The notes below the pieces were generated by a model, which worked only from the letters and a program-made list of their open reading frames with translations, was not told where the DNA came from and searched no databases. Positions 8,058 to 8,669 of a stretch of 64,000 nt of DNA are shown piece after piece; position 1 is the stretch's first letter; the number at the start of each line of letters is the position of its first letter. Location: positions 248,001-312,000 of the IMG/VR virus record IMGVR_UViG_3300045996_002337; one strand, 5' to 3'. The position numbers and the translations under genes are program-made.

Positions 8058-8669
8058 TTATGCAGAAAATTCAGGATGTTTCTGTGGCAATTGATTGATA
8101 AGTTTTCGACCCAACTTGTTAAGCGCTTTCCATTTGATCTTGAATGAAGTGCTCTCGATGCCACCAAACATAGAAGCGTTCGCATGAAGTTCGGCGAGGG
8201 CAGTCAAAAGAAGAGCAGGAGCCAGGTCAATGCGATCATATGTGTCAGCTTCGGCAGGCTTAAGCAGGTGCATATCCATGTCGCGAGCGATCAGCTCAGC
8301 AATTGTAGGATCACCCCCATTCACGCGCCAGATAGAGGCGCTGATCCTTGCGTGGTCTGGGAAATGCCGACGACCTTCATCATCAATGGTCAAGCAGTAT
8401 GGTTTTCCACAATCGTGATAGATGTGGTAAAGTTCCATCGTCTCCAGATCTGGGCACAGGTTAATCAGCTCAGGATCAAACCAATCTGGCAGTTTCCACC
8501 CCAGCTTACGTTCACCAATCAGGTCCTTAAAGTACGTAGCCACCGATTCACCGTGTTGGAGAATGGTTTGGCCGGGCGTTTGGTAACATGAAGACATCTT
8601 CTCACGAAGAGCCTCGAGCTTTCCGGCGGCTATCTAGCAACTAATGCTATAATTGTTGGCGCTGTTCAT
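8058..8669 (-). CDS. HD-domain phosphohydrolase; probable true start 8669 with in-frame TAG at codon 12 (alternative start 8597)
   Basis: H..HDCGKP..HFPDHA..HxxD motifs; ATG 8669 overlaps upstream TGA (ATGA) and is in frame: MNSANNYSISC*IAAGKLEALREKMSSCYQT. Confidence 0.8.
8629..8658. repeat. 30-bp exact dispersed repeat, copy 1
   Basis: gctatctagcaactaatgctataattgttg, identical at 32175-32204. Confidence 0.9.

What the first reader, a model, noticed from the sequence alone, without database searches (positions are those of the whole stretch)
8629..8658. 30-bp exact repeat (also 32175-32204) with TAG in all three minus-strand frames
Seen: the minus strand reads caacaatta-TAG-cat-TAG-ttgc-TAG-a-TAG-c, four ambers covering all three frames, with nested palindromes. 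Copy 1 supplies the HD gene's codon-12 TAG. Copy 2 supplies the HNH stop just upstream of the RNA ligase. Both copies precede candidate RNA-repair genes. Alternatives: TAGATA may be a variant of the TAAATA late promoter, and the plus strand carries a TGcTATAAT extended -10 that could drive antisense RNA. If it is a promoter, the HD gene may simply start at 8597.
Basis: partly seen in the sequence, partly recalled or inferred. Interest (0 to 1): 0.65.

Follow-up and report, generated by a model that had tools for sequence, protein, structure and literature searches.

The report
Jumbo-phage gene-boundary regulatory box
The 30-base repeat is one of about ten copies of a conserved box at the ends of transcription units in an uncultivated group of giant phages; it is most likely a transcription signal, and its TAG stop codons look incidental.

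Summary
The 30-mer is exact at 8629-8658 and 32175-32204 on the minus strand, with four TAGs covering three frames.

It is not a two-copy oddity. The window lies in a 349,660-bp jumbo phage that holds 10 copies, 4 of them exact. Related IMG/VR phages hold 1-10 copies each. Ralstonia phage RsoM2USA and Xanthomonas phage XacN1 hold none.

Thirty-six aligned copies share A.AGCATTAG.T...A.ATA. Nine of the ten copies run with the local genes. Most start just after a stop codon, and half or more abut a bidirectional intrinsic terminator. Six diverged copies sit at orthologous junctions in relatives. The four exact copies, including both window copies, sit in genome-specific accessory regions.

The amber reading fails. 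Code 11 already gives 91.6% coding. The HD protein starts at 8597, the same 179 aa as its RsoM2USA homologue.

Best guess (0.38): a factor-recognised box inside a compact terminator/promoter cassette. Its plus strand carries TGCTATAAT, the phage's own early -10 type. This promoter faces real genes at two conserved loci and points antisense elsewhere.

Main rival (0.30): a sense-strand pre-terminator signal. No RNA data were available, so the working strand is unresolved.

The parts
8629..8658 (-). Box copy 1, an exact 30-mer. It lies between the stop of ORF 8666-9073 and the HD gene start at 8597. No terminator or other promoter is beside it.
32175..32204 (-). Box copy 2, an exact 30-mer. It holds the HNH stop codon (32193-32195) and lies 14 nt upstream of the -35 of the RNA ligase early promoter.
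8645..8653 (+). Extended -10 (TGC + TATAAT) on the opposite strand of copy 1. The predicted start is about 8660 and points antisense into ORF 8666-9073.
   Evidence: read from sequence; promoter class; inferred, no RNA data
32191..32199 (+). Extended -10 (TGC + TATAAT) on the opposite strand of copy 2. The predicted start is about 32206 and points antisense into the HNH gene.
   Evidence: read from sequence; inferred
8058..8597 (-). HD-domain protein, 179 aa. It starts at the ATG at 8597, downstream of copy 1.
8666..9073 (-). 135-aa ORF of unknown function. Its TGA stop lies 7 nt before copy 1.
32193..32687 (-). HNH endonuclease, 164 aa, with its own early promoter at 32745-32717. Its stop is the first TAG of copy 2.
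32132..32160 (-). Early promoter (TGTACA, 17 nt, TACAAT, with TG) of the RNA ligase gene 30746-32107.

Best explanation
The repeat is a clade-specific regulatory box that marks transcription-unit boundaries in a group of jumbo phages carrying a T4-type late sigma factor. I take it to be the promoter half of a compact terminator/promoter cassette, comparable to the PeSL cassettes of T4-type phages. Read on the window's plus strand, the order is: a bidirectional terminator (present at half or more of the copies), a roughly 13-bp factor box (TAT[C/T]T...AA[C/G]), CTAA, the extended -10 TGC-TATAAT, about 6 nt, and a G start inside a conserved GCG. The host sigma-70 polymerase would start there. 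The invariant bases outside the -10 imply a phage protein that recognises the box as DNA. At two conserved loci this promoter faces a real gene. At the other loci, including both window copies, it fires back into the 3' end of the preceding gene and would give antisense RNA. The four identical copies sit at junctions of accessory-gene modules, as expected if such cassettes are also recombination points. Shown: family membership, conservation, positions and the -10 match. Inferred: promoter activity, the binding factor and the antisense RNAs.
For: The genome holds 10 copies, and relatives hold their own sets. Six old copies lie at orthologous junctions in genomes only about 70% identical in DNA. 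The 4 exact copies lie in regions with no clear orthologue. TGnTATAAT is the phage's standard early -10: the 24 minus-strand sites precede gene starts. Eight of the 9 plus-strand sites are elements. TGCTATAAT is perfect in 17 of 35 distinct copies tabulated by hand. GCG lies at a fixed distance after the hexamer in nearly all copies. The conserved block spans about -31 to +3 of such a promoter. At G000 12851 a conserved 81-aa gene on the other strand starts 17 nt beyond the box, also in G002. At 151340 the whole box-plus-terminator module is inverted in three genomes and lies 20-95 nt upstream of a gene with a ribosome-binding site. A second half-box lies exactly 31 nt away, about three helical turns, at three independent loci. 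This fits binding to DNA. No covariation supports an RNA stem. PeSL precedent: PMC2839356, PMC4122927.
Against: There are no RNA data: no sequencing run was listed. Eight of ten copies would fire antisense, and no terminator follows within several hundred nt. The conservation profile is not that of a plain sigma-70 -10. On that strand -12 and -10 are invariant, -11 is over 90%, and by my hand counts -9 is 80%, -8 is 72% and -7 only 61%. All G001-type copies read TATAAA, and three G002 copies lose A at -11. There is no -35. No extra sigma or MotA-like factor was identified. The intragenic copy keeps the box while its -8/-7 bases vary. The window copies have no terminator, so they are not full cassettes.
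Confidence: 0.38

Rival explanations
1. The box works on the sense strand as a pre-terminator or 3'-UTR signal. A phage or host factor would recognise it in the transcript, or in DNA ahead of the polymerase. It would modulate termination (enhancing it, or acting like a nut site to prevent it), or it would direct RNA processing or stability at operon ends.
For: Nine of ten copies are co-oriented with the local genes. Six begin 5-9 nt after the upstream stop, and one contains it. Half or more of all copies are followed within 0-16 nt by a hairpin plus T-run, and the box-plus-terminator unit recurs within and between genomes. Copies at convergent gene ends (G000 36789, 171091) make sense for a 3'-end signal. 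The invariant AGCAUUAG contains the RN/WUU pattern that I recall as the RNase E preference. That is from my own knowledge and was not tested.
Against: The box-plus-terminator module is inverted relative to its neighbours at one locus in three genomes, and there it stands in front of genes. At 12851 no sense gene ends upstream. Neither window copy has a terminator. No conserved RNA structure was found and no Rfam family matches. The 31-nt phasing of half-boxes suggests DNA. One copy lies inside a translated ORF.
Confidence: 0.3
2. The box is mainly a recombination or mobility site: a short homology patch or endonuclease target at which gene modules are exchanged. It would have little regulatory role of its own.
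For: The four identical copies have unrelated flanks with sharp borders and lie in genome-specific regions. One abuts a free-standing HNH gene. PeSL-mediated shuffling is a precedent.
Against: Six copies have been held at orthologous sites across deep divergence, with invariant positions. One lies inside an ORF and shows no synonymous change in TAT AGC ATT AGC in four genomes. That is purifying selection on the sequence itself. HNH genes were not seen next to the other copies I annotated.
Confidence: 0.14
3. The box is a sense-strand promoter for phage-specific transcription. It would be either a variant late promoter using TAGATA/CAAATA, or a promoter of T7/SP6 style starting at the purine after ATA.
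For: It is a contiguous 21-30 nt block with genome-specific variants followed by G or A. Genes follow in the same direction at 6 of 10 copies. The genome encodes a gp55-type late sigma.
Against: Most copies run straight into a terminator, and two face convergent genes. About 70 late promoters here read TAAATA, but only 2 of 36 boxes do. No T7-type polymerase was found, although the control for that search was silent.
Confidence: 0.08
4. The ambers are the point. The box would be a three-frame stop cassette or a site of programmed TAG read-through, linked to the phage's two tRNA-CUA genes.
For: Two tRNAs with anticodon CTA lie 2 kb away. In this genome the box closes all frames, and the HNH gene ends at TAG-CAT-TAG.
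Against: Upstream genes stop at TAA or TGA before the box. Coding density does not rise when TAG is read as sense: 91.6% versus 91.9%. The HD start at 8597 matches its homologues. The TAGs are not all conserved, and one frame is open in G001-type copies.
Confidence: 0.03

Closest known systems
PeSL cassettes (promoter-early stem-loops) of T4-type phages (Arbiol 2010, PMC2839356; Comeau 2014, PMC4122927)
   Same: Both are short intergenic cassettes repeated many times per genome. Both pair a sigma-70-type promoter with a stem-loop terminator of the A-run/G-run...C-run/T-run kind. Both vary in consensus between phage pairs and concentrate at junctions of variable gene modules.
   Different: This box has no -35. 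It carries about 19 invariant or near-invariant bases that a sigma-70 promoter does not need. Its promoter strand is mostly opposite to the flanking genes. Several copies, including both window copies, lack the stem-loop. Recombination at the box has not been shown.
T4 MotA-dependent middle promoters (as reviewed in PMC3016281)
   Same: The logic is the same: a sigma-70-type -10 plus a factor-binding box in place of the -35. In T4 some of these promoters serve ends other than gene expression, as at the replication origins oriF and oriG.
   Different: The box sequence and position differ: about -31 to -16 here, against a 9-bp box centred at -30. No MotA or AsiA homologue was sought or found. 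There is no A+T-rich unwinding element downstream.
Lambda oop and other phage cis-antisense RNAs (from my own knowledge)
   Same: A promoter just beyond a gene's 3' end points back into that gene.
   Different: Lambda oop is a single short RNA with its own terminator. Here there would be about eight such sites with no terminator in view.
Lambda nut / rrn boxA antitermination sites (from my own knowledge)
   Same: Both are linear conserved boxes lying after a stop codon and ahead of a terminator, oriented with transcription.
   Different: This box has no boxB-like hairpin and no similarity to boxA beyond a few bases. It sits 0-16 nt from the terminator and is inverted at one conserved locus.

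Membership tests
PeSL-type terminator/promoter cassette | A sigma-70-like promoter with -35 and -10 elements | tested here: inconclusive
   The extended -10 TGCTATAAT is perfect in 17 of 35 distinct copies (hand tabulation) and in 8 of 10 in this genome. There is no -35, and -7 is only 61% conserved.
PeSL-type terminator/promoter cassette | A stem-loop terminator within the cassette | tested here: inconclusive
   A hairpin plus T-run lies within 16 nt in half or more of the copies. It is absent at both window copies.
PeSL-type terminator/promoter cassette | Enrichment at junctions of variable gene modules | tested here: met
   The 4 exact copies lie where flanks have no clear orthologue in G001 or G002. 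The 6 old copies lie in conserved regions.
PeSL-type terminator/promoter cassette | Recombination between cassettes (indels, mini-circles) | not testable with these tools
   This needs very close genome pairs or inverse PCR.
T4-type late promoter (gp55) | TATAAATA-type -10 (here TAAATA) lying 20-60 nt before a start codon | tested here: not met
   About 70 intergenic TAAATA sites define the class. Only 2 of 36 boxes carry TAAATA, and terminators or convergent genes follow many of them.
Amber (TAG) reassignment | In-frame TAG in conserved genes, and a coding-density gain when TAG is read as sense | tested here: not met
   Coding density is 91.6% against 91.9%. Thirty-five ORFs end at TAG. The HD start is confirmed by homologues.
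Amber (TAG) reassignment | A suppressor tRNA with anticodon CUA | tested here: met
   Two tRNAs with anticodon CTA lie at 10611-10686 and 10693-10769.
Single-subunit (T7-type) RNA polymerase promoter | A T7-type RNA polymerase gene in the genome | tested here: inconclusive
   PF00940 gave no match, but the control genomes gave none either.
T4 MotA middle promoter | A TGCTT-type MotA box centred at -30 | tested here: not met
   The box reads TAT[C/T]T...AA[C/G]CTAA at about -31 to -16.
Described RNA family (Rfam) | A match to any covariance model | tested here: not met
   Only tRNAs and tmRNA passed in the window. Nothing meaningful matched at the boxes.

The most novel reading that the evidence does not exclude
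A jumbo-phage clade uses one factor-recognised box to launch a set of about eight programmed antisense RNAs from just beyond gene 3' ends. These promoters are often insulated by bidirectional terminators. The result would be a genome-wide cis-antisense control layer, with box specificity co-evolving from genome to genome.
Probability: 0.2. Interest if true: 0.7.

Novelty: new variant of a known kind. Interest (0 to 1): 0.45.

Why it matters
Transcription control in uncultivated jumbo phages is almost unknown. This box is a strongly conserved non-coding signal found at about ten places per genome and kept at the same junctions across genomes only about 70% identical. It therefore gives a concrete handle on how these phages delimit or cross-regulate transcription units. 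Its unidentified binding factor is a worthwhile target. The result also removes a false lead: despite two amber-suppressor tRNAs nearby, the TAG-rich repeat is not evidence of stop-codon recoding. For annotation, the HD gene starts at 8597, and the box marks gene boundaries.

Tried and rejected
- Megablast of both loci against named phages found nothing. A short blastn of the box found only chance hits.
- RsoM2USA and XacN1, the nearest named phages by late sigma, lack the box: hits equalled the reversed-pattern control.
- A 17-mer scan of viral contigs gave 1 true relative among 39 chance hits. The degenerate pattern was needed.
- Rfam gave no match at gathering or permissive thresholds.
- RNA structure: the mean z-score of folds is about -0.8 on either strand. 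The GC flanks pair no better within a copy than between copies. The TAGCA/TGCTA hairpin is specific to this genome.
- Sequencing runs: none was listed, so no reads could be laid.
- A literature word search for the motif found only unrelated primers.
- No extra sigma factor with region 4 was found, only a weak helix-turn-helix hit.
- Resemblances to IHF, sigma-54, Tus/Ter, CRISPR-repeat and replication-origin sequences were considered by eye and dropped. The matching bases are not the conserved ones, or a required part, such as an A+T-rich unwinding region, is absent.
- The idea of a strand-specific nick site for loading the clamp could not be tested.

Full report
**Observation**

The 30-mer is present exactly at window 8629-8658 and 32175-32204, both on the minus strand. 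No such pair occurred in 100 shuffles. TAG begins at positions 10, 16, 23 and 27, so all three frames are closed. A 5-bp inverted repeat, TAGCA/TGCTA, is present. The HNH ORF (32193-32687) ends at the first TAG of copy 2. The HD 'codon-12 TAG' exists only if that ORF is started at the ATG at 8670.

**What the window is**

The window is bases 248001-312000 of a 349,660-bp IMG/VR virus record rated 97% complete. GC content is about 51%. It carries many tRNAs and a tmRNA. It encodes a T4 gp55-type late sigma factor: phrog_234, E = 3e-29.

The nearest named phages by that protein are Ralstonia phage RsoM2USA (55% identity) and Xanthomonas phage XacN1.

Two promoter classes stand out. Early promoters read TGTACA, about 17 nt, then TGnTATAAT. 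Late promoters read TAAATA and lie 20-60 nt before start codons at about 70 intergenic sites.

**The family**

Genome-wide there are four exact copies: G000 113017, 256629 (window copy 1), 280175 (window copy 2) and 318257. Six diverged copies lie at 12851, 36789, 81035, 151340, 171091 and 212753.

A degenerate pattern found true relatives in other IMG/VR contigs. Two fragments of about 250 kb hold 8-10 copies each, counting only copies with at most one mismatch. RsoM2USA and XacN1 have none. None was seen in the truncated sample of 120 bacterial and archaeal hits.

Thirty-six aligned copies share A.AGCATTAG.T...A.ATA, followed by GC or AG. The stretch between the invariant blocks is typical of each genome: TTGCTAG here, CTTCAAG in G001/G004/G005 and CTGACAA in G002/G003.

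**Context**

- Nine of ten copies run with the local genes.
- Six start 5-9 nt after a TAA or TGA stop, one contains the HNH stop, and one follows a 35-aa ORF.
- Half or more of all copies are followed within 0-16 nt by a hairpin plus T-run whose A-tract makes it bidirectional.
- The box-plus-terminator unit recurs within and between genomes.
- Two copies sit where minus-strand and plus-strand late genes converge.
- A late promoter often follows the terminator.
- At 113017 and at window copy 2, an early promoter follows instead.
- Window copy 1 has neither. The HD start is 31 nt away.

**Age of the copies**

Flank comparisons with two relatives that are about 70% identical in DNA give a clear split. 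The six diverged copies lie at orthologous junctions. The exact copies have no clear orthologous junction: three have unmatched flanks, and 113017 has only weak flank matches near a G002 copy. The old copies are therefore under long-term constraint. The identical copies, including both window copies, are young and sit among accessory genes. Their identity stops sharply at the box.

Two loci are especially informative.

- **The copy at 81035** lies in frame inside a 315-aa ORF next to PAAR and baseplate genes, in four genomes. The codons TAT AGC ATT AGC show no synonymous change, although the surrounding linker residues differ. This indicates constraint at the nucleotide level. In G002 the same site is a gene end followed by the box and a hairpin.
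- **The copy at 151340** is inverted relative to its neighbours, together with its terminator, in three genomes. There it lies 20-95 nt upstream of a gene with a ribosome-binding site.

In addition, beside the copy at 12851 a conserved 81-aa gene on the other strand starts 17 nt beyond the box, in both G000 and G002.

**The amber idea**

A crude gene set under code 11 covers 91.6% of the genome. Reading TAG as sense gives 91.9%. Thirty-five ORFs end in TAG. The HD protein aligns from its first residue to 29 jumbo-phage homologues. The RsoM2USA homologue is annotated at the same 179 aa. Upstream genes stop at TAA or TGA before the box. One frame is open in G001-type copies.

The TAGs are therefore a by-product of an A+T-rich signal. 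The two tRNA-CUA genes remain unexplained, and nothing ties them to this box.

**Mechanism**

On the opposite strand the box reads TAT[C/T]T...AA[C/G]-CTAA-TGC-TATAAT, then about 6 nt, then GCG. TGnTATAAT is the phage's own early -10. The 24 such sites on the minus strand precede gene starts. Eight of the 9 on the plus strand are boxes. TGCTATAAT is perfect in 17 of 35 distinct copies, by my hand tabulation. It dominates the TGn+TATAWN sites in the relatives too.

Several things fit this reading:

- The whole conserved block spans about -31 to +3 of such a promoter.
- On that strand the order is terminator then promoter, as in PeSL cassettes of T4-type phages.
- The two inverted or divergent loci put it correctly in front of genes.
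- Half-boxes lie exactly 31 nt away at three independent loci, which suggests a protein bound to DNA.

Several things count against a plain sigma-70 promoter:

- The -7 position is only 61% conserved by my counts, while supposed spacer bases are invariant.
- G001-type copies read TATAAA.
- There is no -35.
- Most copies would fire antisense, with no terminator ahead.

I therefore rank first, at 0.38, a factor-recognised box within a compact terminator/promoter cassette.

The sense-strand pre-terminator signal ranks second at 0.30. It explains the co-orientation, the closeness to stop codons and the abutting terminators. It does not explain the inverted locus or the 12851 locus. It also lacks any conserved RNA structure.

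The remaining readings rank lower:

- A recombination-only role: 0.14.
- A sense-strand phage-specific promoter: 0.08.
- An amber function: 0.03.

No sequencing run was listed for this DNA, so the working strand could not be settled.

**Comparison and novelty**

The closest known kind is the PeSL cassette. The logic of a factor box plus a -10 recalls T4 middle promoters. This box differs in sequence, in lacking a -35, in its mostly antisense orientation and in its long invariant core. I file it as a new variant of a known kind, not as a member of either family. No paper in the held library mentions the motif.

Noticed in passing
window 10611-10686 and 10693-10769 (-): Two adjacent tRNA genes have anticodon CTA, the amber-suppressor type. 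ARAGORN labels them Pyl, and Rfam confirms them as tRNAs. The genome shows no sign of TAG reassignment, so their role is open.
   Followed up: partly
window 11276-11719 (-): The phage encodes a permuted, betaproteobacterial-type tmRNA with tag ANEANYRMAA. This hints at a betaproteobacterial host.
   Followed up: no
window 1-2364 (-): A cluster of 11 tRNA genes includes an odd tRNA-Ser with anticodon ACT.
   Followed up: no
window 2752-3214, 37500-37552, 38636-38674, 52690-52742, 53892-53944 (read on the minus strand): These are families of near-identical early promoters: TGTACA, a spacer with CAGGTTG, TGnTATAAT, then AGCWTCAT. Some lie in repeats of 111 nt spaced 216 nt apart. They look like classical PeSL-type repeats.
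   Followed up: partly
G000 80688-81635 (+) = L168:2689-3636; orthologues in L050, L056, L077: A 315-aa ORF beside PAAR and baseplate genes carries the box in frame, encoding YSIS[F/L][K/Q]IA, in an interdomain linker. In G002 the same site is a gene end, so the C-terminal domain looks fused on through the box.
   Followed up: partly
G000 212690-212700, 318215-318225; L137, L138, L071, L160: A short motif (GTTGCCCGGG and variants) recurs between terminator T-runs and the TAAATA late promoters. It may be an upstream element of late promoters.
   Followed up: no
window 54855-54914: Three tandem 15-nt units (GGTTCCCCACCACCA) are probably a short peptide repeat in a minus-strand gene.
   Followed up: no
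G000 151162-151338 (-) = L169:3162-3338: A 58-aa ORF has a lipoprotein-type signal (LSTC). It lies directly downstream of the inverted box and a second early-type promoter. It could be a spanin-like or exclusion lipoprotein.
   Followed up: no
window 32193-32687 (-): A free-standing HNH endonuclease gene with its own early promoter sits between an ORFan and the RNA ligase gene. Its frame ends at TAG-CAT-TAG, a tandem amber stop that would limit read-through if the suppressor tRNAs are active.
   Followed up: partly
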